The notes under the pieces were generated by a model. The model ran no database searches. It had not been told where the DNA came from and worked only from the letters and a program-made list of their open reading frames with translations. Of a DNA stretch of 64,000 bases, positions 20,569 to 64,000 are shown in pieces (the stretch's first letter is position 1; every line of letters starts with the position of its first letter). A program made the translations under genes and the position numbers. The stretch comes from Obrimoposthia wandeli (lineage: Eukaryota). Location of the stretch: NCBI GenBank assembly GCA_977020255.1, contig CDROCS010005043.1, forward strand, positions 1 to 64,000. The letters run 5' to 3'.

Positions 20569-21195
20569 CTAAGATTTTTTAAGTTTACCGGTATTTCGAG
20601 TGATCGTTTTATTCTTAGGCCAGTGATCAAAATAGATATGATTACTTTGCCACAATACTTTTTCAGTATTATCACTTAGTAATATATTTGCGACTGCAAA
20701 AGAAAATTCAAAACTAACACCTAAACCTCGGCCAGTAATAAAGTTATCTTCAATAACAACATCTTCATCGACAAAGACCCCATCATTAAATTTGGTTGGC
20801 AGGCCATCACCAGTGGTATATTTACGCGAGCCTAAAAGACCATGGGCAGCCAATACTTTCGCACCAGATGAACACAAGGCACAAATCAATTTATCTTCAA
20901 GAATATGGCGCTTAATAAAATCAATCACCATAGTATTAGCAGATAAATTATCCGTCCCCTTTGGTCCACCCGGCATCATGATCGCATCATAAGTCTGTGT
21001 TTGTTTTTCAGTAAGCGTATAGTCTGCCGTAATACGAGTTTCAAAATACGTCTCTAATGCCGTGGTTTCCATGCACGAAAGTACATCAACCTTAATATCA
21101 AGACGACGCATAATGTCGATAAATACCACCGCTTCACCTTCTTCAAAACCGTCAGCCAATAATACCGCTACATGTTTTTCAGTTTGAGGCTTCAT
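20569..21195 (-). CDS. DJ-1/PfpI (YajL-like) protein
   Basis: VAVLLADGFEEGEA, MPGG..G..NL, nucleophile-elbow ALCSS, ITGRG.G. Confidence 0.85.
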   Translation of the reverse strand: MKPQTEKHVAVLLADGFEEGEAVVFIDIMRRLDIKVDVLSCMETTALETYFETRITADYTLTEKQTQTYDAIMMPGGPKGTDNLSANTMVIDFIKRHILEDKLICALCSSGAKVLAAHGLLGSRKYTTGDGLPTKFNDGVFVDEDVVIEDNFITGRGLGVSFEFSFAVANILLSDNTEKVLWQSNHIYFDHWPKNKTITRNTGKLKKS

Positions 21196-21204
21196 AATGT
21201 CACC

Positions 21205-21840
21205 TTATCCGTTAACAAGTTTGCAAGTATCAACAGCATTTTTCGCAATCGTATCCCAGTCATGGTCACGAATGGCTGCCGTTGTTGCGATCCAACTACC
21301 ACCACATGCTATAACTTGTGGTACAGCAAGATACTCCAGAACATTAGATGGCTTAATACCGCCTGTAGGCATAAGTTTGATTTGACTATATGGACCAACT
21401 AACGCTTTGACCATATTAACGCCACCAGAGGCCTCCGCAGGGAAGAATTTAACGACATTAATACCAAGCTCTAATGCTTGTTCAATTTGACTTGGGCTAT
21501 TAATACCTGGGATGATTTTAATGCCATTTTCAATACAGTAATTCACTGTTGTTGGATTAAACCCTGGGCTAATAATAAAGTCAGCGCCCGCAGCTACAGC
21601 TTCATCAACTTGCGCAATCGTTAATACTGTACCTGCACACAAGATCACATCCGGAAAAGCGGCGCGAATACGGCGAATTGATTCAGCCGCAGCCGCACTG
21701 CGAAACGTAATCTCTGCTGCTGGTAAGCCATTTTCAGCTAAGACTTCCACCAGTTTTACCGCATCATCGGCATTTTCAATTTGGATCACTGGCATAACAG
21801 CCAATGCTGATAATTTATCAATTAATTCGTTATTTATCAT
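21205..21840 (-). CDS. eda: KDPG/KHG aldolase
   Basis: EITFRS, GAGTV-like AGTVL, F.ISPG, KFFPAE, PTGGI. Confidence 0.93.
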   Translation of the reverse strand: MINNELIDKLSALAVMPVIQIENADDAVKLVEVLAENGLPAAEITFRSAAAAESIRRIRAAFPDVILCAGTVLTIAQVDEAVAAGADFIISPGFNPTTVNYCIENGIKIIPGINSPSQIEQALELGINVVKFFPAEASGGVNMVKALVGPYSQIKLMPTGGIKPSNVLEYLAVPQVIACGGSWIATTAAIRDHDWDTIAKNAVDTCKLVNG

Positions 21841-22795
21841 TTTCGACTCTCATTCTGGTAATTAAATTTTGCATAAATTCGGTTGGTATCACAGCGCCTT
21901 TGTATTGAATGACTTGGCCTGCAAGGCTATTTCCCCAAGCGCAGCAATCAGCCATAGGTTGTTCTTCAGACCAAGCAGCAAGGTAGCCAGCATTAAAAGA
22001 ATCACCAGCCGCTGTGGTATCAACAACTTGGTCAACTTTATTACCAGTGACAACACCTTGTGAGCCCGCATGGGACCACATAGCCCCCTCACTACCTCGT
22101 TTTACCACCACCTGTTTAATGCCAAGGTCATGTAAACGTTTAGCAATAATGGTTGGCGCAGTATCTTCCGAACCCAGCAGTAAATCTTCATCATCGCCGG
22201 TCACTAAGGCGATATCACTCAACTGATAAAGTTTATCTAACCACTCTTGCGCATGTGCAGGGCTTTGCCATAATCGCGGACGATAGTTAGAATCAACCGC
22301 GATCTTAACGCCAGCTTTTTTTAACGTGGCTAATGAAGCCAGTAATTTCAATTTACTACTATCAGGTAAAATGGCCAGAGAGATACCCGATAAGTAGATC
22401 AGATCCGCATCCACTAAGCTAGCCATATTCAGCTCAAAGTCTGCATGTTCGCACATATGACGTGCCGCAGAATCATTGCGCCAATAACTGAATGTACGCT
22501 CACCTGTTGCATCAATCGCAATGGCGTACAGCCCGGGGATCTTAGTTTCATCTAAGGTGACAAGGCTGGTATCAATGCCTTCATTACGCCACGCTGTCAA
22601 CATTGATTGGCTGTATCGATCAACGCCCAATCCTGTTATGTATTGTACCGACACATCCGGTTGTAAACGCGAGAGATAAACAGCTGTATTAAGTGAATCA
22701 CCACCAAAGTTTTGTTGTTGAGTGCCAAACGGCTTACCGCTTAACTCAATCATACATTCACCAATAATGGCTATTTTTTTATGTTTTTTCATCAT
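21830..22795 (-). CDS. kdgK: 2-keto-3-deoxygluconate kinase (PfkB family)
   Basis: IGECMIEL, GGDSLNTAVYL, GERTFSYWR, DSNYRPRLW, DTTAAGDSFNAG. Likely start is ATG 22795. Confidence 0.93.
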   Translation of the reverse strand: MMKKHKKIAIIGECMIELSGKPFGTQQQNFGGDSLNTAVYLSRLQPDVSVQYITGLGVDRYSQSMLTAWRNEGIDTSLVTLDETKIPGLYAIAIDATGERTFSYWRNDSAARHMCEHADFELNMASLVDADLIYLSGISLAILPDSSKLKLLASLATLKKAGVKIAVDSNYRPRLWQSPAHAQEWLDKLYQLSDIALVTGDDEDLLLGSEDTAPTIIAKRLHDLGIKQVVVKRGSEGAMWSHAGSQGVVTGNKVDQVVDTTAAGDSFNAGYLAAWSEEQPMADCCAWGNSLAGQVIQYKGAVIPTEFMQNLITRMRVENDK

Positions 22796-22899
22796 AACCC
22801 TACTCAACGGTAATACCTCCATTATCGTAATATCCAACTGCCACAACGAATTAAGGCACTTGATTTATATTTACACAACTCAGACAATGAAAACAAAAC

Positions 22900-22933
22900 C
22901 TTTCGATTACTTTCAAACAATGATATTCGAAAG
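22900..22933. promoter_or_regulatory. AgaR-type boxes upstream of kdgK-eda
   Basis: CTTTC at 22900 and 22910 (10-bp period), inverted GAAAG at 22929. Confidence 0.6.
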
Positions 22934-23084: not shown

Positions 23085-26000
23085 TTATTTTTGTTTTTTG
23101 AGCGTCACTTGCTGTGGTATACCAAAATAGCTTACAAATGTTAAAGAAGTATTATCACCAGATACACTCACTTTAACCTTATCGTTATCGGCAATCACAT
23201 CCCAGCGGCCTTGAATAACAACGGGAATATCCATTGGTATCGCCGCTGTATAACGCGTCATATTCAAGTCCGGAGTCACACCACTAATATTAATAGTGTC
23301 TTCACTCACTTGTCGTGTCATGACAATCGATGGTTTTGACATACTCACAACTAAACCATCGCTAAAGCTAGTGCCTGAAAAAGCACTATACGCGGTCGTT
23401 TTAGTTTCTATATCATAAACAACATGGGCATTATCGTCTTTTTGCAGTACTTGATAAGGCTTGTTACCCGCGGTAGTTTCAGCTGCAATACGTGCCATCG
23501 ATTCCGGCGTCGCATCAAGTATGGTTAAATACTCATACTCAGCATCATCAGGGGCATCCCCATGATTTAACCAAGCAACAGTAAAGTCGCCCTCTGTTGG
23601 TTTTTTACTTTGATTATGTGCTGATTTTTGATGCTGACGGCGTACTTCAAGTTCACCATCACTGACTAACACATAGCCATTACCTTGGCCGTCAATGAGC
23701 CAGTCACCTTTCGCTAATGTCGCAGTATAAGGAAAGGCGTCAATTTCTGTGCCATTCACCCATATACTATTCGACTTAGCTGTGTTCGCATGTTGGAACA
23801 ATGTCGTTTCAGTATTAAAACCATCACTACTGCTCTCGATATTGCTACCCAACATCACCAAACGGTTGTTCACCGAGAAGGTTGTTTTAAGCATTGAGAA
23901 ACCACTATCAAATTTTGCCGTAGATGGTGCTTGATGCTTAAACGCAAACATACCATATTGACCATCCAAACTTGATGCACCACTAAATGCTTGGTTACCA
24001 CGTAACATCAAGGTATGCGAATTTGGACTATCAAGTTGCTCTAGCGGTAAATGAATCGTCGTGGCTCCAGGGTTACGATTCCAATCCCAACCCGCTTCAA
24101 CAAAACCAACATCAGCTTGCTTTCCATAAGGCACAATCTGTACTGCACCGTGACTTTGATAGCGACCATAACGGTTATCACGATGATAGATCTCTGACGA
24201 CCAAACATTACTATTATACGCCTTCATCGTCACCATTTTGTCCTGATAACGGTGAATACCAAACGCACCACCATTAAACGCCCAATAACCTTGTGGGAGG
24301 CTTTCTGGTTCAACCCGTTCGCCAAATAATGCCACCGACTGGTCTGCCGTTTTACCTGTGATTTGTAAATATGCAGCAGCAAGTTCATGATCGACATCAC
24401 CATCACCAGACAAATCACCTGAAAGTGCTAACCAACGAAATGAATCTTGGAATGACGCTAATTTAGGTGGATTTAATGGGTGGCGTCCAGATAAGCCGAT
24501 ACCGACTTCAGGATTACTATATACCCAAGCTGATAACATCGCTTTTTTCAACGCTTTGCGACCCGTTTCACCGACTGCATACGGGGTACCACTGAGCATA
24601 TAAACCAGTTGAGCAGCATTTTTGAAAGCAGGAAATGAATAACCCGGATAGTTACCTTCATGACGCCACGCAGTACCATCTGGTCGTAAACCATCATAAC
24701 CACCAGGTGGTGTTTGCGACAATGCGATATCAATGTAATGACCAAATTTTTGCAATAAAGCAACTCGACGATTAATATCAGGTTCGAGCATTAACAATGC
24801 GAGATGTTGTCGTGACAAGGTATTGAAATAATCTAAGTTAGAACTTTCAAGTCCCGGTACCATATCAAAATTATCTTTAAATTCACGTGAATACCATAAT
24901 AAGGCATCATAAACAGGCTTACGTAAATCATGCTGAGTTAACACATCAGACATTAACATCGCTGAAATATACCACCAACGACCATAGTAACCCCAGTGGT
25001 GTGTCGTCACCAATGAACTGCCATCAACGAATCCCTGGTCTAGGATATGTTGTGTCATTAACACATACATATCTTCCAGCTCTTGTTTAATAATAGGGTC
25101 GTTCGTATTGTTCCATGCTCTACTGATATTTAGCAATAATGTAGAATATTTTCCTTGCGATACATAATCATCAATCAATTTTTTATCTGCGGGCTTTAAA
25201 TGCTCAGGCTGATAAATAACACGCTGTTTATTATTGATCAGATGACGGCCAGAAAGATTACCGTCACTGTCACGTTTGATTTCAAGAGCAGTGAATTCAG
25301 CGCGTAACGCATCTAAATCGGTATTTATTTTCAACCCTGTTTCACCCGCTATGTTAGTAAATACATTAACCAGTGAATTACGTACCAAGTTAGCAGTTGC
25401 AATTTCTTCAGCTGTTGCAACTGGAACAATTTTAGATAAGTTAAAATCAATTTCAGGGATTGTATAACGGGTTTTAACTTGATCATCAGACCATTGATAA
25501 CGAGAATCATCAACTGACAACATCACTCGATCTATATAAAAAGTACCATCTTCAGCATTGCGAGGGGCAGTAAAACGGATAGTATCCATATCACTGCGGA
25601 CACTACCAAAAATACTACTACTACCTAAGCCTTCGCCATCTTTATTGTCAGTCGGCGCGATACCTTCGACTTCTCGGCCTTGAATGTCATTCGCTAAAGA
25701 AACACCAACGGCTCGCCAACCGGTAAAATTCATATTGACACTAAAACCAGCATCAGCATCAGCGGTTCCAGTCAATCCACGACCTAAGTCAACCACAACA
25801 TCATCATCAACAGCGACTTCATTGTAAATCCAAAATGATAATACTTGCGTGCCTCGACGTCCCCAAGTCTTTTTCGCTTGGGCGTCAGTAATTAGCTTGA
25901 TCGGTTGATTGATAACAAAAGCACTGCTCTTTGTCCAATCCCATTGCAGAGAATGTCTGCCCATGATGTAACGCTTGTCACTCATCTGTAAAGTAGAGCC

Positions 26001-26186
26001 TTGTCGAGCAACAATATTATCAGGTACTTTGTCTTCTGACAGTGGAATAATGAGCGATTCCATGACAGGTGCGATAACGTTTTTTTCTTCCACCGCTTGC
26101 ACTTTATTCATATCAGCACAAGCTGTGAGCCCAAGTGCGGTAACGATACATAAAGATATCTTTTTTAATTTCATTGAAGTATGCAT
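23085..26186 (-). CDS. Chondroitin sulfate ABC lyase, cABC-I-like (PL8), lipoprotein
   Basis: Lipobox LTAC. THHWGY, GLRPDGTAWRHEGNYPGYSFPAFKNA (catalytic His/Tyr), SGRHP, WSSEIY.RDNRYGRYQSHG and GWDWNRNPG match Proteus-type cABC I motifs. Confidence 0.93.
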   Translation of the reverse strand: MHTSMKLKKISLCIVTALGLTACADMNKVQAVEEKNVIAPVMESLIIPLSEDKVPDNIVARQGSTLQMSDKRYIMGRHSLQWDWTKSSAFVINQPIKLITDAQAKKTWGRRGTQVLSFWIYNEVAVDDDVVVDLGRGLTGTADADAGFSVNMNFTGWRAVGVSLANDIQGREVEGIAPTDNKDGEGLGSSSIFGSVRSDMDTIRFTAPRNAEDGTFYIDRVMLSVDDSRYQWSDDQVKTRYTIPEIDFNLSKIVPVATAEEIATANLVRNSLVNVFTNIAGETGLKINTDLDALRAEFTALEIKRDSDGNLSGRHLINNKQRVIYQPEHLKPADKKLIDDYVSQGKYSTLLLNISRAWNNTNDPIIKQELEDMYVLMTQHILDQGFVDGSSLVTTHHWGYYGRWWYISAMLMSDVLTQHDLRKPVYDALLWYSREFKDNFDMVPGLESSNLDYFNTLSRQHLALLMLEPDINRRVALLQKFGHYIDIALSQTPPGGYDGLRPDGTAWRHEGNYPGYSFPAFKNAAQLVYMLSGTPYAVGETGRKALKKAMLSAWVYSNPEVGIGLSGRHPLNPPKLASFQDSFRWLALSGDLSGDGDVDHELAAAYLQITGKTADQSVALFGERVEPESLPQGYWAFNGGAFGIHRYQDKMVTMKAYNSNVWSSEIYHRDNRYGRYQSHGAVQIVPYGKQADVGFVEAGWDWNRNPGATTIHLPLEQLDSPNSHTLMLRGNQAFSGASSLDGQYGMFAFKHQAPSTAKFDSGFSMLKTTFSVNNRLVMLGSNIESSSDGFNTETTLFQHANTAKSNSIWVNGTEIDAFPYTATLAKGDWLIDGQGNGYVLVSDGELEVRRQHQKSAHNQSKKPTEGDFTVAWLNHGDAPDDAEYEYLTILDATPESMARIAAETTAGNKPYQVLQKDDNAHVVYDIETKTTAYSAFSGTSFSDGLVVSMSKPSIVMTRQVSEDTINISGVTPDLNMTRYTAAIPMDIPVVIQGRWDVIADNDKVKVSVSGDNTSLTFVSYFGIPQQVTLKKQK

Positions 26187-26241: not shown

Positions 26242-28341
26242 TTAGAAACGTTTAGTAGTAGAAATACCAGCAACCAATTCAGTATATTTATCACGCTGGT
26301 AATAATTTAAACCAGCAGAAATACTAAAGTCATTTTCCATTTTAAAATGACCATTTAATTTAGCTTCTAATACATCACCGCCAACTTGATCACCAGAGAT
26401 CACAAAACGATCCCCAGAAGTATCCATCTTCAGAGTTGCACTTTCACGGAACACTTGATCTGAGTTTAAGTCTTTATAACCCATCACAGAGAATGATGGT
26501 GTAAATTGACTGTTTTCCATTTGAAAAGTGGTGAATATGTTGTAGCCAATGCCAACTTGTTTTGTACTGTAAGTTTGACGGTCATATCGTAAGCTAGCAG
26601 GAGAGCCTTGCTCTTCATAATCAGCACTGCGGATCCACTGATAATTATAAGCAATACGAGGTTCAAATTGCACAGATTCCAGATCAAATTTCATCCCTGC
26701 CATCAATTGATAGCCTAACTGAAATGAACTGTATTCAGCCTTTGCATGAGTATCGCCTTCATAACCTGAACGATTACCAATAACTCTTTCGCTGGTATTA
26801 TCATTACGACCAATATTAACATTGCCATCAATAAAGTAACGTTGATCAAACCAGCCGCTATAAATCATCCCTTGAAAACTATCAACTTCATTACTGCTGT
26901 TATTATTGTTAATATCAGCGCTCGAATTAGCATAAGCTAATGAAGCGCCAAACAAGCGTTGTTTATCAAAAACGCGGTCAAAACCAACGTTAATACCATA
27001 GGTACTCAAAGAATAACCGTTCACAGATGCTGAATCAGCTTGCCTACCGCTACTGTATAGCGCATGGCTCCAGATATTCCAGCCATTATTTGCAGTTCCC
27101 AACGCACTTTGATTACGTAAAATATTAGTACGCTCATCAACTTGACCACGCATTTTATCGACGAGCATAAGCGCAGCACGTAGTTCACTTCCTTCTGCAT
27201 CAGGTGTGATGTCATCTGCTAGTTGAGCTGTTTTTATCGCGTCATTACCCGACGATGTTAATAAAGCCAATAACTCAGCAGAAGCATCTGAACCGGTTTT
27301 ATTATGTGTATTAAGCGCATAATTCACCATGTGGTTAGCGGTCGCTACTTCATTGTTATTAGCACCACCAGCAGCAGCTAAACTAACAAATTGATCACCA
27401 CCTTGATAATTAACCGCGTAACGTACAATTAATTGATTACCCGACACACCGCCGTTAAGTGCTGGAGGTGTTTTCTCTAACCATGAACTCTGCACCGCTA
27501 ATAGTGGTGACATAGTCAGGTTTGATTTTGCCGCAGGTTTATCTCCCTCAATAACAATACCGGATCCGCCTTTTATGCCACCATCAGATTTCAGTAACAC
27601 AATATCTTTACCTAAAATATCATTTACACTGCTACCTTTATAAGAGAATTTCACCTTGTTATTAACGAACTCTGTTTTTCCTTCAACCTGTAAAATAGGT
27701 GCATCTAAATTACTCGTATCACCGACATTGAAGGTCAAGGTTGAACCCGCTTTATTACCAAAGTCCCCTCCCCAAACAATCGTATTAGCCTGACTAATAA
27801 TCGTTAAATTACCATAGTTATTAATGGTGCCAATACCGGTAATAGCGCCTCCATCAAAGATCGCATCTTTACCACTACTACCGTTATAGCCAAAATTTAT
27901 TTTATTACCTGTTACACCATTACCAATAATGCTGCCATCAATTGTGCCGTCAACATCGATACGTAATGAAGACGAGCTCGTACTAAAGTCTATTGCGTTG
28001 ACAAGGCCACTTACCTTCGAACCAGCCTTAACGTAAATCCCTAAATTAGGACTTGCTGGATCACTTTGAATAAAGCGACCATCAATTTTGATACCAGTCC
28101 CGTTACTGCTGGTAATATCATAGCCATCGGTATAAATATTACCTTTAAGTACACCATCACTCGCAACATATATTGCATTCGCATTATCAGCCGTCACTGC
28201 AGCATCATTTTTTAACCACTGACTTCCGAACTCGCCACCTTTATAACTTAGTCCTTCTGCATTAACTAAGCTGGGTGTAAATAAATAGCTCACTACTAGT
28301 AGAGACAATAAACTCGGTTTAAACTTTGGCTTAATATACAT
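26242..28341 (-). CDS. Type Va autotransporter with a Gly/Asn/Ser-rich beta-helical passenger of unknown function
   Basis: Signal peptide ending VNA, AIDA-like passenger, linker helix, and C-terminal barrel (WNIWSHALY...G.SL.TYG...GFD...FEPRIAY...), ending in Phe. Confidence 0.85.
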   Translation of the reverse strand: MYIKPKFKPSLLSLLVVSYLFTPSLVNAEGLSYKGGEFGSQWLKNDAAVTADNANAIYVASDGVLKGNIYTDGYDITSSNGTGIKIDGRFIQSDPASPNLGIYVKAGSKVSGLVNAIDFSTSSSSLRIDVDGTIDGSIIGNGVTGNKINFGYNGSSGKDAIFDGGAITGIGTINNYGNLTIISQANTIVWGGDFGNKAGSTLTFNVGDTSNLDAPILQVEGKTEFVNNKVKFSYKGSSVNDILGKDIVLLKSDGGIKGGSGIVIEGDKPAAKSNLTMSPLLAVQSSWLEKTPPALNGGVSGNQLIVRYAVNYQGGDQFVSLAAAGGANNNEVATANHMVNYALNTHNKTGSDASAELLALLTSSGNDAIKTAQLADDITPDAEGSELRAALMLVDKMRGQVDERTNILRNQSALGTANNGWNIWSHALYSSGRQADSASVNGYSLSTYGINVGFDRVFDKQRLFGASLAYANSSADINNNNSSNEVDSFQGMIYSGWFDQRYFIDGNVNIGRNDNTSERVIGNRSGYEGDTHAKAEYSSFQLGYQLMAGMKFDLESVQFEPRIAYNYQWIRSADYEEQGSPASLRYDRQTYSTKQVGIGYNIFTTFQMENSQFTPSFSVMGYKDLNSDQVFRESATLKMDTSGDRFVISGDQVGGDVLEAKLNGHFKMENDFSISAGLNYYQRDKYTELVAGISTTKRF

Positions 28342-28389
28342 AATTATCACTCTCAGAAATAAATTCAGATCAACTCACACAACACTGAC

Positions 28390-29322: not shown

Positions 29323-29663
29323 AACTTTTTATGACTCCCTAACGTTAAACTCAATGTGATTGTATATATTTTATAAACGCAATTTTAACGATTTCTCACT
29401 AAAAGTTTGTGATCAACCACCAATTATCGAAAGCAAACAAAAGAAACAAAGTAAGTAAAAGAAAAAGTTCAAAAAATATTAACTAATATTTAAATAAGAT
29501 CTAAAACATCATAAACTACTGGTTAATAAAGAATAAGTCGATTTAAATCGCTAGATTAGTAAGCATTGTTAAATTTACTGATCAACACCATGTCACAAAA
29601 CAGTTAATAAAAAGTATAAATACATTGAAATACATTTCATTAAAGCTTTAAAATCTTCACATA

Positions 29664-29698
29664 GAAAGACAAAGAAAGAAAAGGAAAGCAAAGGAAAG
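29664..29698. promoter_or_regulatory. Four AgaR-type GAAAG boxes upstream of the Ig-like lipoprotein
   Basis: GAAAG at 29664, 29674, 29684 and 29694, an exact 10-bp period. Confidence 0.7.
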
Positions 29699-48089: not shown

Positions 48090-48141
48090 CTTTGAAGTCT
48101 TTCACAAACTTTCAATTTCTTTCAATTCATTCCGAACTTTA
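48090..48141. promoter_or_regulatory. AgaR operator array upstream of agaR-kbaZ
   Basis: CTTTC at 48099, 48109 and 48119 (10-bp period) flanked by CTTTG 48090 and CTTTA 48137; further boxes at 48025 and GAAAG at 48356, 48382, 48417. Confidence 0.7.
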
Positions 48142-55044: not shown

Positions 55045-55275
55045 GAAAGCATTCGAAGAACCACTTGATAAAATGAACACAAATAAATCAACTCAATTTT
55101 ATTTATTATTTTTATCCAAGATATCATTAACACAGCTTAACAACGCGATTTGTTAACGCTACGCTTATCACAAAATAAATATAAAAATAAAAAATGGCAT
55201 ATCCGAAAATAACTAATTAACTTACAATGAAAATAATCGAAACAAACATAACAATAAAAACCTTCATTAACTTTC
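55045..55275. promoter_or_regulatory. Paired AgaR-type boxes in the MCP/lyase divergent region, plus possible CRP site at 55015-55030
   Basis: GAAAG/GAAGA 55045/55055, GAAAA/GAAAC 55229/55239, CCTTC/CTTTC 55261/55271; TGTGA-N6-TCAAT at 55015. Confidence 0.5.
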
Positions 55276-58300: not shown

Positions 58301-58426
58301 GTTGACCCTGTTGACCCTGTTAAACCCGTTGACCCTGTAGATCAACCAAAAGACACAGGTGGTTCATTCAACTTCAGCTTGTTAGCTTTCCTTGGGCTGA
58401 TTATGGCCTTTAGAATTAAATTATAA
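55304..58426 (+). CDS. Chondroitin sulfate ABC lyase, cABC-I-like (PL8), with C-terminal GlyGly-CTERM sorting signal
   Basis: Sec signal; THHWGY, GFRPDGTAFRHHGNYPGY, AGRHPF, WSAEIY..DNRFGRYQSHG; ends in Pro-rich linker plus TGGSFNFSLLAFLGLIMAFRIKL. Confidence 0.93.
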   Translation: MPGKSMPSLSRHTNRLIKKSLFLLSVLLPTISHANSLTADIFSFEASQKPSWISGEQVALSTKRAVLGQQSLYWQWQQPSAELALNNLGIQRLSDKQATDAYVSNATQVLSFWIYNENAIDASLTVTLHDDTQSKVTNFPVLLNFTGWRAIGVSLNLDLDKSFKDTAELSRITFTSPTKVGMTTGALYLDRIMVSVDDYRYQWSDSQVTTRITEPEIDFELPADLPEPSVSELEDAELIKQTIITEFSGDPGSISTLESRFSNFNISKDNNGVIRGRHLLTAKQQIIYQPNNLTAADKIDFNEYAILDDGDSKGNKASGYSKLMLDIAKAYHNPKYSGDKVRLSSMYQLMTEHLLDQGFADGSSLVTTHHWGYAGRWWYISALMMEQTLTDNQLLDPVYKALLWFSREFKESFDMKLTTTSSNLDYFNTLSRQHLALLLLNPDDKERIALLHKFSTFFSGALAQTPPGTNDGFRPDGTAFRHHGNYPGYAFPAFQNAGHVIYMLQDTEFSINKAGMDKLKLVMQAGWNYTNAVVPLSIAGRHPFTTLGVKNYANALKWVANSYPQVDEELAAVYLQVMGISEQNSATHFGKTIKPAVLPQGSWSYNGGAFTVHRSGERMAMVKGYNKDVWSAEIYTKDNRFGRYQSHGSVQVFPYGNPVDYGFKQEGWDWNRNPGTTTIHLPLSQLESPKTSTVMVRSEEGVSGAVSLQDKYGLFTFKHKAPSNITNFESSFVAHKQVLTNGDKLYLTGNNISNTDGINSTETTLFQLAITSKSQGLFINNDKRITNDTFSTEITSGDWIIDDNGVGYYLINAPKVNVQRKMQSSKHNKTKADTLGRFSSAWIDHGTAPDKTSYEYIMVMQATPQQMIALAQEMQNGPLFKVLTEDLDKQVVWSKTDNLYGYTSYIASTFNQGPIKKIETTALVLAKITTDKLHLSVSAPELNLTNNGSPVQAIPVIFEINGLWQTDDTTFSHTANSTIITAESLFGQSVNISLRPVDPVDPVDPVKPVDPVDQPKDTGGSFNFSLLAFLGLIMAFRIKL
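58289..58342 (+). repeat. Six tandem 9-bp units encoding the PVD/PVK linker
   Basis: cctgttgac x3, cctgttaaa, cccgttgac, cctgtagat. Confidence 0.9.
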
Positions 58427-58527
58427 TCTAACCATATTTGGTAATAAGACATTCTGCTCTTATTACCAAATCATCAGATCATTACTTTTATAGTCTTTAT
58501 TTTGAGACCTTATTAAGGAAACTAGAA

Positions 58528-60087
58528 ATGTCGATTTCACGCCGCGATTTACTTAAAGGCATTGCAATTACAGGTGCGGGAGCCGCTGCAGTTGCAACAA
58601 CAGGATGCAGCTCACTGACTTCCAGTAACGCGATTACGCCAAAAGCCGTTCCGGGTAAAAAGCCTAATTTACTTATTGTTTTCCCTGATGAGATGCGAAC
58701 TCATGCGATGGAATTCATGAAGCAAGACCCATCACATACACCCAACATCAACAAGTTTGCCAAAGAAGGCGTGCATTTAAAACAGGCTGTATCTAACTTC
58801 CCGTTATGTACACCATTTCGCGGTATGTTAATGACGGGTCAGTATCCGGTTCGCAGTGGTATTCAAGGTAACAGTCATACGCCTATGCCAGGTAAATACG
58901 GTGGTAGTGACTTTGGTATTGAGCTCAACCGTAATGCATTAACCTGGTCTGGCATCATGAAAGAACAAGGTTATAGCATGGGTTATATTGGCAAGTGGCA
59001 TCTTGATGCACCGCACGCACCATTTGTACCAAGTTATAATAACCCAATGGAAGGCAAATATTGGAACGACTGGACACCACCTGAACGTCGCCACGGTTTT
59101 GATTTTTGGTACGCATACGGTACCTATGATTTACACATGAATCCGATTTATTGGACCAATAATACGCCGCGTGATAAACCGCTGCAGATCAATCAGTGGA
59201 GCCCTGAACATGAAGCCGATATCGCGATCAAATATTTACGTAATGAAGATGGTAAATACCGTGAGGATGACCAGCCGTTTAGCTTAGTTATATCAATGAA
59301 TCCACCGCATTCACCATATGACCAGGTACCACAGAAATATTTGGACCGATATAAAGATGATACGTCTGAAAGTCTCAATACCCGTCCAAACGTACAGTGG
59401 GATAAAGAATATACCGAAGGTTATGGGCCTAAATTCTTTAAAGAATACATGGCAATGATCAATGGTGTTGATGAGCAATTTGGCCGCATAGTCGATGAGT
59501 TAGACAGCCTACAGTTAGCTGAAGATACCCTAGTGGTCTTCTTCTCTGATCACGGTTGCTGCATGGGCTCAAACGGTAAACCAACCAAGAATGTACACTA
59601 TGATGAATCCATGCGTATCCCAATGATCTTCCGTTGGCCAGGCACACTTGCTGCACAAGACAGTGATATTTTATTCTCAGCACCTGATATTTATCCGACC
59701 ATGTTAGGTCTGTTAGGTATGGAAGATTTGATCCCAGATACGGTTGAAGGTACCAACTTTGCTAATACCGTACGTGGTATTAAAGGTGATAAACAGCCAA
59801 CATCACAGTTCTATACCTTCATGCCATACGGCGCTCAATCTTATGGTCGACGCGGAATAAGAACAGATCGTTATACCTTGGTGGTTGATCGTCGAATTGC
59901 AAAACCACTCAGCTATATTTTGCATGATAATCAAAACGACCCTTACCAAATGAGTAATATTGCCGAAGGTAATGACGAACTGATCCACCAACTTATCGTC
60001 GCAGAACTCATGCCATGGCTTGAACACACTGGTGATCCTTGGCGTCCAACCGAGGTGCCTGAAAGCGTGATGAATGCTTATACTTAA
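58528..60087 (+). CDS. Tat-exported S1 sulfatase (possible lipoprotein); candidate chondroitin 4-O-sulfatase
   Basis: ATG 58528 after AAGGAA; SRRDLLK Tat motif and TTGC; PNLL...DEMR, CTPFRG (CxPxR), GYIGKWH, NPPH.PY, SDHG. Specificity is inferred. Confidence 0.9.
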   Translation: MSISRRDLLKGIAITGAGAAAVATTGCSSLTSSNAITPKAVPGKKPNLLIVFPDEMRTHAMEFMKQDPSHTPNINKFAKEGVHLKQAVSNFPLCTPFRGMLMTGQYPVRSGIQGNSHTPMPGKYGGSDFGIELNRNALTWSGIMKEQGYSMGYIGKWHLDAPHAPFVPSYNNPMEGKYWNDWTPPERRHGFDFWYAYGTYDLHMNPIYWTNNTPRDKPLQINQWSPEHEADIAIKYLRNEDGKYREDDQPFSLVISMNPPHSPYDQVPQKYLDRYKDDTSESLNTRPNVQWDKEYTEGYGPKFFKEYMAMINGVDEQFGRIVDELDSLQLAEDTLVVFFSDHGCCMGSNGKPTKNVHYDESMRIPMIFRWPGTLAAQDSDILFSAPDIYPTMLGLLGMEDLIPDTVEGTNFANTVRGIKGDKQPTSQFYTFMPYGAQSYGRRGIRTDRYTLVVDRRIAKPLSYILHDNQNDPYQMSNIAEGNDELIHQLIVAELMPWLEHTGDPWRPTEVPESVMNAYT

Positions 60088-60236: not shown

Positions 60237-60299
60237 TGGCAACTAAATGTTATATAACTGAAGTTCCGTTATTTTAATTCTATGATTAGGTATATAAAA

Positions 60300-61202
60300 A
60301 TGAAAGTTAGTCTAAACACTCTTTATGCATGCGCTATCCTATCTTCTTGTAATGCCCTTGCTGAATCCAATAATAAAGTAGTACTTATTGGCCTTGATGG
60401 CGTACAGTATGAACAATTACTTACAGCATCCACACCTAATATTGACAAATTAAATATTTTATCCGGTTTCACTGGAGGGGAGTTAGGCGGTATTTCTGAA
60501 CAAATTACATCATCAGGACCAAGCTGGACGACCATTTTAACCGGTACTTGGGCAAACAAGCACCAAATTAAAAACAACAGTGCTCGCTTTGCAAATCCTC
60601 AACACCCTTCAATTTTCAAAGTACTGTCAAATGCAGAGCGCAGCAGTAGTGCAATGCTTGGTTGGGCGAATCCAATGCGTGATTACCTTACTTATGATCA
60701 ACCATTATTAGACTATCTATATTACCCTGATGTTAAAAATAATAATTTAGAAGACTACCGAGTAATGGATGAAAAATTATCTTATATGTTTACTCGAACA
60801 TTAAAAAAATTCAATTCAGACTTTACATTTGTACATTTAGATCATGTCGATGATGTCGGTCATCAGTTAGGATTTGGTCCTAAATACAGCCAAGGTATTA
60901 CGAAATTGGATGATTACGTTGGTCGAATAATTACCGCAACAAAAAAAAATAAAGATCAAAATTGGCTAATTCTGTTAGTAACAGATCATGGCCGAAGTAA
61001 TAAAAATGGCGGTAAATCGCACGGAGAACAGACAGCACAAGAAAGAACAATATGGATAGCTGCAAATAGAGATATTAAAATCCCTCTAAATTCACTTTAT
61101 GGCCAAGTATCCTTAGTAGATATAGCACCAACAATTTATGATTTTCTTGCAATAGAAAGTAAAGGCCTTGATTTAGATGGTCAGTCATTATTGGTAAAAT
61201 AA
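60300..61202 (+). CDS. Exported alkaline-phosphatase-superfamily (type I phosphodiesterase/NPP-like) protein
   Basis: VVLIGLDG, TSSGPSWTTILTG, HL..VD..GH, TDHG, DIAPTI; signal peptide with possible LSSC lipobox. Confidence 0.85.
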   Translation: MKVSLNTLYACAILSSCNALAESNNKVVLIGLDGVQYEQLLTASTPNIDKLNILSGFTGGELGGISEQITSSGPSWTTILTGTWANKHQIKNNSARFANPQHPSIFKVLSNAERSSSAMLGWANPMRDYLTYDQPLLDYLYYPDVKNNNLEDYRVMDEKLSYMFTRTLKKFNSDFTFVHLDHVDDVGHQLGFGPKYSQGITKLDDYVGRIITATKKNKDQNWLILLVTDHGRSNKNGGKSHGEQTAQERTIWIAANRDIKIPLNSLYGQVSLVDIAPTIYDFLAIESKGLDLDGQSLLVK

Positions 61203-61282
61203 CCTCAGCTAATACAGAGAGTCATTCAATATTCTATGATAAGCACCTGTAACATCGCCTACAGGTACTTATCTGTGAAATA

Positions 61283-64000
61283 TTAACCTTGAGTTAGTTC
61301 AAGCTTAATACCTTCAGCGCGAACAGTGGTGACCTGCAACAACGTATTACCACCTTTCTGCACAGTTAGTTTAACTGCTGCTGGTAATGTTGAAGTTGCG
61401 TGCCACAACCCTTTTAATACAAGCTGCGTAGCGGTATCGGCAGAAGCATTATCTTTCCAACTATTACGTGAATAGATGCTAACTTCTTTTTGGATACCGC
61501 CAGCGTCATATTGACTCTCATCTTTACCTTGATAAAGATTTAAATCGGGATTCACAATATGCATGATTAATTGCTGTTTATCTTGTGTCACCATCACCAT
61601 CGATGCAGCATCTATTGACTTAATCAAGCAGTCCCCGAGGTTCGTAACAGGATTAAAGAAAGCATAACTACGTGTATTAGACGCCCGGTCCCAGACAATA
61701 TGTGCATTATTATCTTGTTGCTCGACAATAAAAGGTGCTGCGCTTGTTGATTGTAATTGTTCAGCAAATTTAGTCGCTTGCTGGACATTTGAATCAATCA
61801 ATACCGAATATGCATAACGTCCATCCGTTGGTTTAATACCATGATTAATCACGGCCGTGGCAAACCTCCCTTGTGTTGGTTTACTATTCTTTTGATTAAA
61901 TGACTCCTGCTCAATAACCGACACAGTAACGGTACTATCGTCACCAACAAAATAAGCATTCTTATCAGGGTCTAATAATATATTTATGCCATTTTCTGTC
62001 GTTTTCGTAATATAAGTACCAGGTTCTACAACTTGCCCATTAACAACCATTTTATCACTATCTTGACGTAGTGCATGCTGGAACAATGTGGTATCAACCT
62101 GATGTTGTACATCTTCAGTCTGAATACCACTACCAAGGGCGACAATGAGATTATCAAAAAAGAACACTGATTTATTCGCCACAAAGCTAGCATCATATTT
62201 AGGATGCCCTTGTAGCTTCATAGCAAATAACCCGTTATCACCGTCACTGAGTGCGCCAGAATATGTTTGTTCCGACATTAACATTTCTTCTAAGCCACTG
62301 AACTTATCCACATTCAATAATTCAGCTTCTAGATCAGCGATAGGTAACTGTACTGCAGTTGTGCCAGGCCAGCGATTCCAATTCCAACCATCGTGACTAA
62401 AACTACGTGATTTACCATCATTATCCATGATCTCTAATTGACCGTAATTAACATAACGCCTTGGGTTATCGATTAAAGTATTAGCATAGCCTGCGAATTG
62501 TCAAGTGCAACGCACTAAATCCACGAGCTGCAGCAACCAGCTATATCAATGGCAAGGATACCCAAGTTCGCAAAGTCTACGTCTAGTTTCCCGTTGTTAT
62601 TGCCGCATTAATATCTTGTGACGTATGCAACGCGAAAACGCATCAACGCCCGGAGCTGCTGCAACAGGTCAGCCATATCGGTATCAATCACACTTTTACC
62701 ATCAACAGAACCTGCCATCGTCATATGTTCAAAAGGCTTTATAGCAATATCTTGCTTTCCATCAGGATGACACCTGGCTTTATCGACATTGTACCAACCA
62801 ATTACTATAAATCTCCGTCATTGCCACAGCATTTTAATACCGCGATGCGCTTGTGGTTGGGGTCGTTATAAAGATGTACAGTCGACCCAGCGCTTCCAAT
62901 GTGAGTTAACCCATTTACGTAACCTTAGCATAAGCAGGGCAATGCTAGCAACGGTGAAAAACAGTTCATCCGGTTTAAATCCACCACCAAGCCCTTTAGA
63001 ATTATTAATCGAGCGTGATAACCAGAAGCTAAATTGATTTAACCACGCTGACTTTATATTTACATCTGGCTGCATTAATATACTGTATAACATGCCTCGC
63101 AATTGGGTATTCATCACATCAACATTGAAATTGGTCATTTCCGATATAGGACGATAAATACGTCCCGTCCCTGCAAACCACGCCATCATATCACTCACAT
63201 CTTTGGCCAACATATTGGCCGCGAGTAGGTCTCGATTATAATAATGGGCTTGAAACAGCGCACGTAAGATATAACCAAAGTGATGAGAAGTACCGACAGC
63301 ACTACCAGACTCATAACCTTGCGTTAGCCCATAGCGCGTTAATGACAGATACATTTTGGTCAATTCTTGTTGTTCAGCGTCAGAAATATCTGTATGCATC
63401 ATTTTCGCAATCGCAAACATAAAATCACCATAATCACGCAATTTAACAACATCAAAAACGGTATCGAAACCACTTTCGTTTAGTAACCCTTTATTAATGC
63501 CTTTATCTAAAAATGTTTGTAAACGATTGGCATTATCGAGTGGTTTTCCGGTAACAACACCATTTATCTCTAGCAATTCATAAGATTGATATTGGCGACG
63601 TACATCATCCATCGTCATCGCATTCATACGACCAGAATCTTGATTAACAAAAGAATCAAGCTTTGCAGTGATCACATTCACTGCTGAGTCATCTAATGAT
63701 GGAACCGATGAGCCAACATCAGTACCCAGCAAAAAATTGTGGTAACGGTAGAGTGCTAACCAGTGTCGATTCGGCGCCACGTCCGCAGCTAAATTAATAA
63801 AAGGAACAGTCGCATCGCGGGTTGGCCAACGCGGATCGACAGGAATATTCATCATCATTTGATCAAAGTATAAAGTAGTAGCATCAAGTGTGGCAGCTGT
63901 ACGAACCTGCATGAAATTCATGCCTATTTTCGGATTCCCTTGCATATCTTTAAAAGGGATCATCAACTGACGCCAACCATCAAAATCCAGCGACACATCA
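61283..64000 (-). CDS. Third chondroitin ABC lyase, cABC-II/exolyase-like (PL8); 5' end outside the window, frameshifted at about 62430-62965
   Basis: 5' part: GWR, PVDPRWPT.D, SHHFGY, D..NT.LRG, GGFKPD. Reading across frames gives PAYAK and HPDGKQDIAIKPFEHMTMAGSVDGKSVIDTDMA. 3' part: GWNWNRWPGTT, Lyase_8 C-terminal domain. Confidence 0.85.

What the first reader, a model, noticed from the sequence alone, without database searches (positions are those of the whole stretch)
20569..64000. More than 43 kb chondroitin/dermatan-sulfate foraging locus in a gammaproteobacterium, with no SusC/D or TonB-dependent receptor
Seen: depolymerisation (3 PL8 lyases), desulfation (2 sulfatases plus maturase), disaccharide cleavage (GH105), uronate catabolism (kduI, kduD, kdgK, eda), GalNAc catabolism (PTS, agaA, agaS, kbaZ), a regulator and a chemoreceptor are all contiguous. 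Established: Bacteroidetes GAG PULs use SusC/D, and streptococcal GAG clusters use a PTS plus Ugl/KduI/KduD. Inference: this locus is a hybrid. It uses Firmicutes-style PTS uptake and a Gram-negative surface module (porin, autotransporter, Ig-lipoprotein) in place of SusC/D, and at least six components are uncharacterised. It suggests a cartilage or connective-tissue scavenger or a fish-associated lifestyle. Partial versions exist in Proteus/Vibrio-type organisms, so the novelty lies in the accessory genes.
Basis: partly seen in the sequence, partly recalled or inferred. Interest (0 to 1): 0.85.

Follow-up and report, generated by a model that had tools for sequence, protein, structure and literature searches.

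The report
Chondroitin-sulfate foraging locus, porin-based uptake
This is a real, nearly complete gene set for eating chondroitin/dermatan sulfate from animal tissue in a Moritella-like marine bacterium; its core is the common gammaproteobacterial layout, but it also carries a conserved, co-regulated outer-membrane set (porin, autotransporter, lipid-anchored lyase, lectin-tipped lipoprotein) whose role has not been tested.

Summary
From 20.5 kb to the window end lie two intact chondroitinase-ABC-type PL8 lyases, a third PL8 that reads as broken, a PL29-type lyase, two Cys-type sulfatases with an anaerobic maturase, a GH88-family hydrolase (not shown to be GH105), KduI/KduD/KdgK/Eda, a mannose-family PTS with AgaA/AgaS/KbaZ, AgaR and a chemoreceptor. 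No TonB-dependent or SusC/D gene is present.

The "hybrid" reading is only partly new. The GH88-Kdu-PTS-Aga-AgaR core recurs in 80 fetched loci from about 20 gammaproteobacterial genera. Published work covers a Vibrio hyaluronan locus and a Moritella cluster with a porin. Two "uncharacterised" genes are known families: DUF4955 is PL29, and DUF2264 is GH154, a glucuronate dehydratase.

Three points are new here:
- An OmpG-like porin, autotransporter and PL8 lyase (mostly lipoprotein) triad recurs in Moritella, Photobacterium, Vibrio, Yersinia, Salmonella and Proteus.
- An Ig-repeat lipoprotein with a C-type-lectin-like tip always sits beside such lyases.
- Phased CTTTC boxes, probably the AgaR operator, mark the promoters of the surface genes and of the catabolic genes.

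Verdict: new member of a known kind, with a testable outer-membrane uptake hypothesis.

The parts
20569..21195 (-). DJ-1/PfpI family protein, last gene of the kdgK-eda operon
   Evidence: Pfam PF01965 5.7e-32. Orthologues (64-72%) lie within 10 kb of GH88 in 10 of 80 loci.
21205..22846 (-). Eda (KDPG aldolase, 21205-21840) and KdgK (21830-22846)
   Evidence: Pfam Aldolase 2.6e-70 and PfkB 2.8e-59.
22900..22914 (.). CTTTC-N5-CTTTC box upstream of kdgK
   Evidence: Exact match.
23085..26186 (-). PL8a, chondroitinase-ABC-I-like lyase with a lipoprotein signal (lipobox LTAC)
   Evidence: Pfam Lyase_N, Lyase_catalyt, Lyase_8, Lyase_8_C. 1194 bits to 1hn0. N-terminus.
26242..28350 (-). Classical (type Va) autotransporter with a short beta-helix passenger
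   Evidence: Pfam Autotransporter 4.4e-46. AF2 model pLDDT 84.3. Foldseek hits EstA, NalP and EspP barrels. Passenger conserved across genera.
28390..29322 (-). OmpG-like monomeric porin
   Evidence: Homologues are named OmpG family porin. hhalign probability 85.6, E 5.6e-6 to E. coli OmpG.
29429..29698 (.). Divergent porin/lipoprotein promoter region with phased CTTTC boxes (29429-29443; four boxes in 29664-29698)
   Evidence: The same element sits in the homologous regions of other loci. Controls.
29773..32265 (+). Lipoprotein with about five Ig-like (AIR9/ZirU-type) repeats, one more beta-sandwich and a C-type-lectin-like tip
   Evidence: Pfam IG_AIR9 and NCBIfam ZirU_fam. Family alignment. 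AF2 model pLDDT 86.9. VIA Z 12.7 to InvE 5n40 and Z 8.2 to Lcl C-terminal domain 8q4e.
32701..33825 (+). Secreted right-handed beta-helix protein, function unknown
   Evidence: Pfam Beta_helix 2e-4, below cut-off. Atlas features 0.99 to beta-helix clusters, with PL6/PL9-like families lower in the list. Absent from all fetched loci.
34108..36110 (-). TAT-signal metallophosphoesterase (34884-36110) translationally coupled to an exported 259-aa protein of unknown fold (34108-34887)
   Evidence: Pfam Metallophos 7e-16. The pair follows GH88 in L088 (75% and 62% identity) and L089 (50% and 43%). The 259-aa protein has only three clear relatives (E <= 1e-50) among 1.8 billion representatives.
36143..37897 (-). 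PL29-type (BT3328 family, DUF4955) lyase lacking the Bacteroides N-terminal spacer
   Evidence: Pfam DUF4955 1.2e-34. NCBIfam NF058554 1.3e-93 over model positions 318-836. PMC6994673.
38004..39053 (-). Cytoplasmic unsaturated glucuronyl hydrolase (Glyco_hydro_88)
   Evidence: Pfam 1e-71. No signal peptide. 65-96% identical orthologues in 80 loci.
39064..40738 (-). KduD (39064-39819) and KduI (39908-40738)
   Evidence: Pfam adh_short and KduI. NCBIfam NF002091, 454 bits against a cut-off of 250.
40844..42082 (-). AgaA/NagA-type N-acetylhexosamine-6-phosphate deacetylase
   Evidence: TIGR00221, 316 bits against a cut-off of 226.
41994..44689 (-). Mannose-family PTS: EIIA, EIID, EIIC, EIIB
   Evidence: Pfam EIIA-man, EIID-AGA, EII-Sor, PTSIIB_sorb. 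Best NCBIfam hit AgaE, 247 bits, below its cut-off of 500.
44699..47160 (-). AgaS (44699-45862) and KbaZ (45886-47160)
   Evidence: TIGR02815, 564 bits; NF012002, 738 bits; both above cut-off.
47210..47986 (-). AgaR, DeoR-family repressor
   Evidence: NF040755, 409.6 bits against a cut-off of 260.
48099..48123 (.). Three phased CTTTC boxes upstream of agaR
48458..49933 (-). GH154/DUF2264 protein, candidate cytoplasmic beta-glucuronate dehydratase
   Evidence: Pfam PF10022 2e-76. PDB 9o4u and 9nwf (glucuronate dehydratase), E about 1e-11. PMC12269599.
50041..52952 (-). SulfA (Sec signal, CxPxR; 50041-51654) and anaerobic sulfatase maturase (51708-52952)
53128..54930 (-). Methyl-accepting chemotaxis protein with an unclassified sensor domain
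   Evidence: Pfam HAMP + MCPsignal. No family for residues 1-300. Adjacent to a PL8 in Photobacterium L005 and L064 and in Vibrio L086.
55261..55275 (.). CTTTC-type box (one mismatch) upstream of PL8b
55304..58426 (+). PL8b, second chondroitinase-ABC-type lyase with a Sec signal
58438..60087 (+). SulfB, CS/DS 4-O-endosulfatase homologue. Likely start at residue 31 (about 58528), which gives a TAT-type signal.
   Evidence: 969 bits to 6j66, aligned from query residue 31. N-terminus.
60282..61202 (+). Small exported alkaline-phosphatase-superfamily protein, not a formylglycine sulfatase
   Evidence: Pfam Phosphodiest 1.5e-17. Atlas. No CxPxR motif.
61283..64000 (-). PL8c, third PL8 lyase. Its N-terminus lies beyond the window. 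It reads as broken within 62429-62865.
   Evidence: Pfam on the two pieces. Three-frame translations. An independent contig disagrees with the window only in 62461-62872.

Best explanation
The stretch 20.5-64 kb is a chondroitin/dermatan-sulfate (probably also hyaluronan) utilisation regulon of the type widespread in Gammaproteobacteria. Here it sits in a Moritella-like genome and carries an unusually full set of envelope accessories.

Proposed mechanism (shown = domain or homology evidence; inferred = not tested):
1. Polymer is captured and cut at or outside the outer membrane. The enzymes are an outer-membrane lipoprotein chondroitinase ABC (PL8a), a Sec-exported PL8b and a PL29-type lyase (families shown; location inferred from the signal peptides).
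2. A lipoprotein with Ig repeats and a C-type-lectin-like tip, and the autotransporter passenger, act as surface binding or display partners (inferred).
3. Oligo- and disaccharides enter through the OmpG-like porin (inferred).
4. In the periplasm a 4-O-endosulfatase homologue and a second Cys-type sulfatase remove sulfate. Both are matured by the radical-SAM maturase (families shown).
5. The mannose-family PTS imports and phosphorylates the unsaturated disaccharide (inferred). It is the only inner-membrane carrier in the locus, and both GH88 and GH154 lack signal peptides.
6. GH88 splits the disaccharide, and GH154 dehydrates saturated GlcA ends so that GH88 can act on them (families shown).
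7. The uronate branch runs through KduI, KduD, KdgK and Eda. GalNAc-6-P runs through AgaA, AgaS and KbaZ.
8. AgaR probably represses the whole set, surface genes included, through phased CTTTC boxes.
9. A linked chemoreceptor may steer cells to the substrate (inferred).
For: - Domain and family assignments.
- Near-full-length similarity of PL8a and PL8b to chondroitinase ABC I, and of SulfB to the CS/DS 4-O-endosulfatase 6j66.
- CxPxR motifs in both sulfatases.
- PL29 and GH154 identities: with PMC6994673 and PMC12269599.
- Signal peptides and lipoboxes.
- Core synteny in 80 loci.
- Porin-autotransporter-PL8 triad in Salmonella diarizonae (stand-alone), Yersinia ruckeri, two Photobacterium species, Proteus, a Moritella MAG and metagenome contig L088.
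- The Ig-lipoprotein family sits beside a PL8 in all nine contexts seen: the window, L001 and seven further loci.
- CTTTC-N5-CTTTC: 13 hits in the window against 3.9 expected, and 0 of 100 shuffles reach 13.
- The same element lies upstream of porin, OprD, lipoprotein and agaR genes in other genera, including the stand-alone Salmonella triad.
- Composition-matched pentamers give 0-5 hits against 25, and other spacings give 9 or fewer against 25.
- Lectin-like tip: VIA Z 12.7 to InvE and Z 8.2 to the GAG-binding Lcl C-terminal domain (PMC11162425).
- PTS import of unsaturated GAG disaccharides has a streptococcal precedent, cited in PMC8222515.
Against: - There are no expression, binding or transport data.
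- That the CTTTC boxes are the AgaR operator rests on position and on my memory of the literature; the key paper was not held.
- The autotransporter passenger has no recognisable ligand-binding or catalytic relative.
- The lectin-like tip is near neutral (20 K/R against 18 D/E). Lcl's domain, by contrast, is described as having a positively charged surface.
- Pfam Lcl_C matched only 1 of 14 family members, at E 0.17.
- The OmpG relationship is distant (probability 85.6 over 129 columns).
- TonB-dependent-like genes occur within 10 kb of the core in Salmonella L056 and Providencia L070, so such receptors elsewhere in this genome are not excluded.
- KbaY is not in the window.
- The beta-helix protein at 32701 has no box with one mismatch or fewer upstream and is in none of the other loci.
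Confidence: 0.72

Rival explanations
1. Outer-membrane uptake is done by a TonB-dependent receptor encoded elsewhere, as assumed for Vibrio alginolyticus. On this reading the porin, autotransporter and Ig-lipoprotein are adhesins or tissue-invasion factors that only travel with the lyase gene.
For: - PMC8222515 proposes TonB-dependent uptake for a related Vibrio locus.
- TonB-dependent-like genes lie near the GH88 core in Salmonella L056 and Providencia L070.
- The lipoprotein tip resembles adhesin tips such as InvE and Lcl.
- The triad stands alone in Salmonella diarizonae.
Against: - No such receptor is in the window, nor among the Pfam-annotated gene calls of nine related loci and one further listed context.
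- A porin gene (OmpG-like or OprD-family) is always part of the module.
- The stand-alone triad still carries the CTTTC boxes shared with aga promoters.
Confidence: 0.2
2. The PTS imports free GalNAc only, as in E. coli aga. The unsaturated disaccharide or uronate enters by a carrier outside the locus, so the streptococcal-type disaccharide import does not apply.
For: - The best NCBIfam match of EIID is the GalNAc transporter subunit AgaE.
- AgaR, AgaS, AgaA and KbaZ are the classical GalNAc pathway.
Against: - GH88 and GH154 have no signal peptide, so their disaccharide substrates must reach the cytoplasm.
- No other inner-membrane carrier is encoded between 20.5 and 64 kb.
- The EIID score (247) is far below the AgaE cut-off (500), so specificity may differ.
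- GH88 is adjacent to this PTS in 80 of 80 loci.
Confidence: 0.15
3. The accessory genes (beta-helix protein, metallophosphoesterase pair, small alkaline-phosphatase-like protein, DJ-1) are unrelated passengers inserted into a hot spot.
For: - The Moritella MAG L001 has the same order but lacks the three genes at 32.3-36.1 kb.
- The beta-helix and alkaline-phosphatase-like genes were found in no other locus.
Against: - The metallophosphoesterase pair follows GH88 in two further contigs at 75% and 50% identity.
- DJ-1 lies near the core in 10 of 80 loci.
Confidence: 0.3

Closest known systems
Vibrio alginolyticus LWW-9 hyaluronan utilisation locus (PMC8222515)
   Same: A gammaproteobacterial locus with two PL8 lyases (one with a type II signal), GH88, a four-component PTS and KduI/KduD-type steps, and no SusC/D.
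   Different: That locus is about 19.6 kb and has hyaluronate-type PL8s. The description read here lists no sulfatases, maturase, porin, autotransporter, Ig-lipoprotein, PL29, GH154 or chemoreceptor. Its authors assumed a TonB-dependent receptor elsewhere.
Moritella yayanosii DB21MT-5 GalNAc/uronate cluster (PMC8477399)
   Same: Same genus-level background. GalNAc PTS and 5-keto-4-deoxyuronate genes sit with an unsaturated glucuronyl hydrolase and an outer-membrane porin, and type V secretion systems are discussed as possible polysaccharide degraders.
   Different: That cluster was reported to lack the depolymerising enzyme. Here there are two to three PL8 lyases and a PL29. The autotransporter sits between the porin and the lyase in one apparent operon.
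Bacteroides thetaiotaomicron PUL CS/DS/HA (PMC6994673)
   Same: The enzyme logic matches: PL8 endo/exo pair, surface PL29, GH88, 4-O-endosulfatase family, surface glycan-binding lipoproteins.
   Different: Bacteroides imports through SusC/D, splits the disaccharide in the periplasm and senses through a hybrid two-component system. Here there is a porin instead, GH88 is cytoplasmic behind a PTS, and control is by a DeoR-type repressor. The PL29 lacks the Bacteroides spacer domain.
Streptococcal GAG cluster with PTS, unsaturated glucuronyl hydrolase and Kdu-like enzymes (Oiki et al. 2019, cited in PMC8222515)
   Same: A mannose-family PTS lies next to the hydrolase and the uronate isomerase/reductase. 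The disaccharide is the presumed PTS substrate.
   Different: Streptococci are Gram-positive, so there is no outer-membrane step, no periplasmic sulfatases and a different regulator. I did not read that paper itself.
Proteus chondroitinase ABC I/II locus
   Same: PL8a is about 54% identical to the Proteus enzyme. In Proteus the same autotransporter and porin follow the lyase, and the same GH88-Kdu-PTS-Aga block lies alongside.
   Different: The Proteus lyase has an ordinary signal peptide rather than a lipobox. No Ig-lipoprotein, PL29, chemoreceptor or metallophosphoesterase pair was seen in the 21-kb Proteus stretches.

Membership tests
PL8, chondroitinase ABC type | Lyase_N + Lyase_catalyt + Lyase_8 super-sandwich architecture and full-length similarity to 1hn0 | tested here: met
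   PL8a and PL8b: (1194 and 860 bits over nearly the whole length).
PL8, chondroitinase ABC type | Catalytic His/Tyr/Arg/Glu residues of chondroitinase ABC I | not tested
   No residue-level alignment to 1hn0 was inspected.
PL29 (BT3328 family) | DUF4955-containing catalytic region homologous to BT3328 | tested here: inconclusive
   NF058554 E 1.3e-93 over model positions 318-836, but 315 bits is below the equivalog cut-off of 1100. Pfam DUF4955 1.2e-34. The N-terminal Bacteroides spacer is absent. Activity not tested.
GH154 / beta-glucuronate dehydratase (PF10022) | PF10022 domain and similarity to BcGDH | tested here: met
   Pfam 2e-76. PDB 9o4u E 8.6e-12 and 9nwf E 6.1e-11. Substrate-binding residues not checked.
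Formylglycine (S1) sulfatases | Sulfatase domain with a C-x-P-x-R motif and a maturase nearby | tested here: met
   the anSME equivalog is above cut-off. SulfB scores 969 bits to 4-O-endosulfatase 6j66. SulfA's regiospecificity is unresolved.
GH88 unsaturated glucuronyl hydrolase | Glyco_hydro_88 fold family, distinguished from GH105 | tested here: inconclusive
   Pfam PF07470 1e-71. I ran no comparison that separates CAZy GH88 from GH105. Assignment to GH88 rests on context.
OmpG family monomeric porin | Homology to E. coli OmpG and a 14-strand monomeric barrel | tested here: inconclusive
   Profile against OmpG: probability 85.6, E 5.6e-6, C-terminal 129 columns only. Homologues are named OmpG family by NCBI. 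Strand number not modelled.
Classical (type Va) autotransporter | C-terminal 12-strand barrel with a helix linker and an N-terminal passenger | tested here: met
   Pfam 4.4e-46. AF2 model. Foldseek EstA 2.5e-19, NalP, EspP.
Invasin/intimin inverse autotransporters | N-terminal beta-barrel anchor carrying the Ig array and lectin-like tip | tested here: not met
   The Ig array and C-type-lectin-like tip are present (Z 12.7 to InvE). There is no barrel domain. Instead there is a lipoprotein signal, conserved in the family. It resembles these adhesins but is not a member.
Lcl C-terminal domain (DUF1566) | Sequence membership in PF07603 | tested here: inconclusive
   Fold match Z 8.2, 21% identity over 100 residues. 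Pfam Lcl_C E 0.17 in 1 of 14 members.
Bacteroidetes-type PUL | Adjacent SusC/SusD pair | tested here: not met
   No TonB-dependent, Plug or SusD domain in any window ORF scanned.
AgaR regulon | AgaR orthologue plus its operator at target promoters | tested here: inconclusive
   AgaR equivalog met. A conserved phased CTTTC element lies at target promoters. Binding by AgaR is not shown and the published motif was not available.

The most novel reading that the evidence does not exclude
A mobile three-gene unit, made of an OmpG-like porin, a classical autotransporter and an outer-membrane lipoprotein chondroitinase ABC, is the proteobacterial counterpart of the Bacteroides SusC/D and surface-enzyme complex for glycosaminoglycans. 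It is often joined by an Ig-repeat lipoprotein with a lectin-like tip, and it is under the same CTTTC-box repressor as the catabolic genes. In this reading the autotransporter is a dedicated partner of the lipoprotein lyase, for surface display or for holding the polymer over the porin. That would be a role not known for type Va autotransporters.
Probability: 0.3. Interest if true: 0.7.

Novelty: new member of a known kind. Interest (0 to 1): 0.5.

Why it matters
How Gram-negative bacteria outside the Bacteroidota move glycosaminoglycan fragments across the outer membrane is not settled. The one detailed Vibrio study read here simply assumed a TonB-dependent receptor.

This locus and its relatives name concrete candidates: a porin, an autotransporter and a lectin-tipped lipoprotein. 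These genes are conserved beside the lyase and share a promoter element with the catabolic genes. They also occur in tractable species (Proteus mirabilis, Yersinia ruckeri, Salmonella diarizonae, Photobacterium), so the question becomes testable.

The same genes sit in fish and animal pathogens. The module may therefore also bear on tissue colonisation.

Tried and rejected
- Shared 9-mers and a best-18-mer search over promoter regions did not exceed shuffled controls. The CTTTC-N5-CTTTC pattern was picked out by eye from those lists and then tested separately.
- PDB sequence searches for the porin, the lipoprotein, the beta-helix protein and the autotransporter found nothing useful.
- Foldseek on the autotransporter model found only barrels.
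- Atlas gave no lead for the 259-aa protein. Exhaustive HMMER found only three clear relatives.
- Pfam found no family for the chemoreceptor's sensor region.
- Literature searches for 'DUF4955' and 'DUF2264' returned nothing.
- 'AgaR' + 'CTTTC' was swamped by the word agar.
- Leyn et al. 2012 on the proteobacterial AgaR regulon is not held.
- The idea that the ~800-aa unassigned ORFs in other loci were TonB-dependent receptors was rejected. All six sampled ORFs of 737-838 aa were AC-type PL8 lyases. Two of the other four sampled ORFs were receptor-like.
- I first read the third lyase as a pseudogene. I withdrew that to 'cannot tell'.

Full report
**What is there.** Six-frame ORF listing and Pfam/NCBIfam scans show housekeeping genes in the first 20 kb: hemA, lolB, ispE, prs, pth, ychF, a tRNA array, an MCP, miaB-phoH-ybeY-corC-lnt. 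From 20569 to the window end there is an uninterrupted run of glycosaminoglycan-related genes.

In map order, on the minus strand:
- DJ-1/PfpI, Eda, KdgK.
- PL8a, an autotransporter and a small outer-membrane barrel.

On the plus strand:
- An 830-aa Ig-repeat lipoprotein.
- A 374-aa beta-helix protein.

On the minus strand again:
- A 259-aa unknown protein and a TAT-signal metallophosphoesterase.
- A DUF4955 protein, Glyco_hydro_88, KduD, KduI and an AgaA/NagA-type deacetylase.
- PTS EIIA/D/C/B, AgaS, KbaZ and AgaR.
- DUF2264, a sulfatase, an anaerobic sulfatase maturase and a chemoreceptor.

On the plus strand:
- PL8b, a second sulfatase and a small alkaline-phosphatase-superfamily protein.

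Finally, on the minus strand, a third PL8 runs off the window. No ORF carries TonB-dependent receptor, Plug or SusD domains.

**Corrections to the observation.**
- PL8a and PL8b align over almost their whole length to Proteus chondroitinase ABC I (1194 and 860 bits).
- The hydrolase matches Pfam Glyco_hydro_88 (1e-71). I had no test that separates GH88 from GH105, so the GH105 label is unconfirmed rather than disproved. Either way the role, splitting the unsaturated disaccharide, is the same.
- The third lyase reads as broken by several frame changes and stops between 62429 and 62865. A contig from public run X1 covers 61200-64000 and agrees with the window everywhere except 62461-62872, where it differs at 63 bases and 47 gap positions. 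The break coincides with a stretch where two assemblies of apparently the same sample disagree. I cannot say whether the gene is truly dead.
- KbaY, the catalytic aldolase partner of KbaZ, is not in the window.

**Known families among the 'uncharacterised' genes.**
- The DUF4955 protein matches the NCBIfam BT3328 family hyaluronic-acid endo-lyase model at 1.3e-93 over model positions 318-836. BT3328 is the founding PL29 surface lyase of the Bacteroides CS/DS/HA locus, and its first ~300 residues are a Bacteroides-specific spacer (PMC6994673). The Moritella-like protein is that catalytic region behind a Sec signal.
- DUF2264 is GH154. Its nearest solved relatives are beta-glucuronate dehydratases. 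PMC12269599 shows that the family converts saturated non-reducing-end GlcA into the unsaturated form that GH88 can cleave. The protein here has no signal peptide, and neither has GH88.
- SulfB scores 969 bits to the solved CS/DS 4-O-endosulfatase 6j66. The alignment starts at residue 31 of the ORF, which exposes a twin-arginine-type signal.
- SulfA is a Sec-exported Cys-type sulfatase whose nearest solved relatives are carrageenan 4S and GalNAc-6 sulfatases. Its regiospecificity is open.

**How common the layout is.** A scan of one genome per species with the hydrolase as query returned 80 loci. The best is a Moritella MAG at 96% identity, which is the basis for calling the window Moritella-like. 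The others are Photobacterium, Aliivibrio, Vibrio, Psychromonas, Budvicia, Limnobaculum, Yersinia, Edwardsiella, Proteus, Providencia, Moellerella, Salmonella arizonae/diarizonae and several Pasteurellaceae.

A tblastn matrix of all window proteins against these loci gives the following counts out of 80:

| Gene | Loci with it |
|---|---|
| PTS subunits | 78-80 |
| AgaR | 67 |
| AgaS, KbaZ | 65 |
| AgaA | 64 |
| KduD | 57 |
| KduI | 54 |
| A close sulfatase | 49 |
| Maturase | 33 |
| GH154 | 30 |
| Chondroitinase-ABC-type PL8 within 10 kb | 20 |

All six sampled unassigned ORFs of 737-838 aa were AC-type PL8 lyases. 'PTS plus GH88 plus Kdu plus sulfatases without SusC/D' is therefore the ordinary gammaproteobacterial solution. 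Related loci are in print for Vibrio alginolyticus (PMC8222515) and Moritella yayanosii (PMC8477399).

**The outer-membrane module.** The 310-aa barrel has 18 relatives in the large protein collection, several named OmpG family monomeric porin. A profile of them matches E. coli OmpG at probability 85.6, E 5.6e-6, over the C-terminal 129 columns.

Every genomic context I could read has the same order, porin, autotransporter, chondroitinase-ABC-type PL8:
- The window.
- Moritella MAG L001.
- Proteus mirabilis, P. hauseri and others.
- Salmonella diarizonae, where the three genes stand alone.
- Yersinia ruckeri, Photobacterium gaetbulicola and P. phosphoreum.
- Metagenome contig L088.

The autotransporters align along the passenger as well as the barrel (38-68% identity, many invariant passenger residues). 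The model shows a short beta-helix passenger, a helical region and a 12-strand barrel. Only the barrel has structural relatives.

The lyase next to the autotransporter carries a lipobox without Asp at +2 in Moritella, Salmonella, Yersinia, P. gaetbulicola, V. cionasavignyae and V. hangzhouensis. It does not in Proteus. In two Vibrio species an OprD-family porin takes the place of, or joins, the OmpG-like one.

**The Ig-lipoprotein.** Full-length relatives exist only in Moritella, Photobacterium and Vibrio. All nine contexts seen place it beside a PL8 and a porin. The family has a conserved lipobox, about five Ig-like repeats with paired cysteines and a conserved C-terminal region.

An AlphaFold model of the last 381 residues (pLDDT 86.9) aligns as a whole to the Yersinia adhesin InvE (Z 12.7). 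Its last ~210 residues align to C-type-lectin-like domains. Among these is the Legionella Lcl C-terminal domain (Z 8.2, 21% identity), which binds sulfated glycosaminoglycans (PMC11162425).

It is not an inverse autotransporter, because it has no barrel. Sequence membership in Lcl_C is not established. The tip is not notably basic. A glycan-binding role is therefore a reasonable inference, not a result.

**Shared promoter element.** The pattern CTTTC-N5-CTTTC (one mismatch allowed) occurs 13 times in the window against 3.9 expected, and no shuffle of 100 reaches 13. Of the seven exact hits, six lie in promoter regions:
- Upstream of kdgK (22900).
- In the divergent porin/lipoprotein region: four boxes in phase at 29664-29698, plus a one-mismatch site at 29429.
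- Upstream of agaR (three boxes, 48099-48123).

The seventh exact hit (45255) lies inside agaS. A one-mismatch site precedes PL8b (55261).

In other genera the same element lies just upstream of the porin, OprD, lipoprotein and agaR genes, including the stand-alone Salmonella triad. In 5.7 kb of such regions, CTTTC gives 25 hits against 0-5 for the nine composition-matched pentamers. Spacing 5 gives 25 against at most 9 for any other spacing.

The only regulator in the locus is an AgaR equivalog. I recall that proteobacterial AgaR sites are built of such repeats, but I could not check the source. I therefore rate 'AgaR operator' as likely, not shown. A first-stage note on another piece of this genome reached a similar AgaR reading. 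That is not independent evidence.

**Other accessories.**
- The TAT-signal metallophosphoesterase and the overlapping 259-aa gene recur as a pair directly after GH88 in two metagenomic contigs (75%/62% and 50%/43% identity). The Moritella MAG lacks them. The 259-aa protein has three clear relatives among 1.8 billion representatives.
- A terminator-like hairpin follows GH88 at 37969-37937. The PL29-metallophosphoesterase-259 genes may therefore form their own unit.
- DJ-1/PfpI ends the kdgK-eda operon and is near the core in 10 of 80 loci. A role in handling the reactive keto-uronate is a guess.
- The chemoreceptor is next to a PL8 in two Photobacterium species and one Vibrio species. Its sensor domain has no family.
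- The beta-helix protein and the small alkaline-phosphatase-like protein were found in no other locus and have no assigned role.

**Mechanism and rivals.** The best-supported model is given under Best explanation. The strongest inferred step is PTS import of the unsaturated disaccharide. Both enzymes that act on it are cytoplasmic and no other inner-membrane carrier is encoded. The weakest step is what the autotransporter does.

The main rival, a TonB-dependent receptor elsewhere, is not excluded. Receptor-like genes lie within 10 kb of the core in Salmonella L056 and Providencia L070, and I could not see beyond 64000.

**Verdict.** It overstates how unusual the hybrid is and how many parts are unknown.

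The locus is a rich new member of a known gammaproteobacterial kind. Its added value is the conserved, apparently co-regulated porin-autotransporter-lipoprotein-lyase unit and the lectin-tipped lipoprotein. I did not find either described in the papers I could search.

Noticed in passing
window 9012-10178: Array of nine tRNA genes on the plus strand (Met, Gln, Leu, Gln, Leu, Gln, Met, Leu, Gln) with near-identical repeated copies.
   Followed up: partly
window 62461-62872: An independent public contig (run X1) is identical to the window over 2.8 kb except in this ~400-base stretch, where it differs at 63 bases and 47 gap positions. This looks like a local assembly-quality problem in one of the two.
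   Followed up: partly
L081 10001-16496 (Salmonella enterica subsp. diarizonae): The porin-autotransporter-lipoprotein PL8 triad stands alone, away from the GH88/PTS locus and flanked by unrelated genes, yet it keeps CTTTC boxes upstream. This suggests the triad moves as a unit.
   Followed up: partly
L085 8232-9743 and L087 409-1908: In Vibrio metschnikovii and V. hangzhouensis an OprD-family porin sits in the module, and the autotransporter in V. hangzhouensis and V. cionasavignyae is only about 450 aa.
   Followed up: no
L070 14227-17187 (Providencia huashanensis) and L056 18929-20947 (Salmonella diarizonae): TonB-dependent-receptor-like ORFs (a Plug domain; Plug plus barrel) lie within 10 kb of the GH88 core. 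Whether they belong to the system is unknown.
   Followed up: no
window 37937-37969: A strong terminator-like hairpin (15 pairs plus a T run) on the minus strand lies between GH88 and the PL29-type gene. It may split the long minus-strand gene run into two transcription units.
   Followed up: no
window 10547-12199: A second methyl-accepting chemotaxis protein lies outside the locus, between the tRNA array and a FAD monooxygenase gene.
   Followed up: no
L040 12607-15402 (Photobacterium nomapromontoriensis): A 932-aa ORF next to the GH88 core has no Pfam family at E 1e-5.
   Followed up: no
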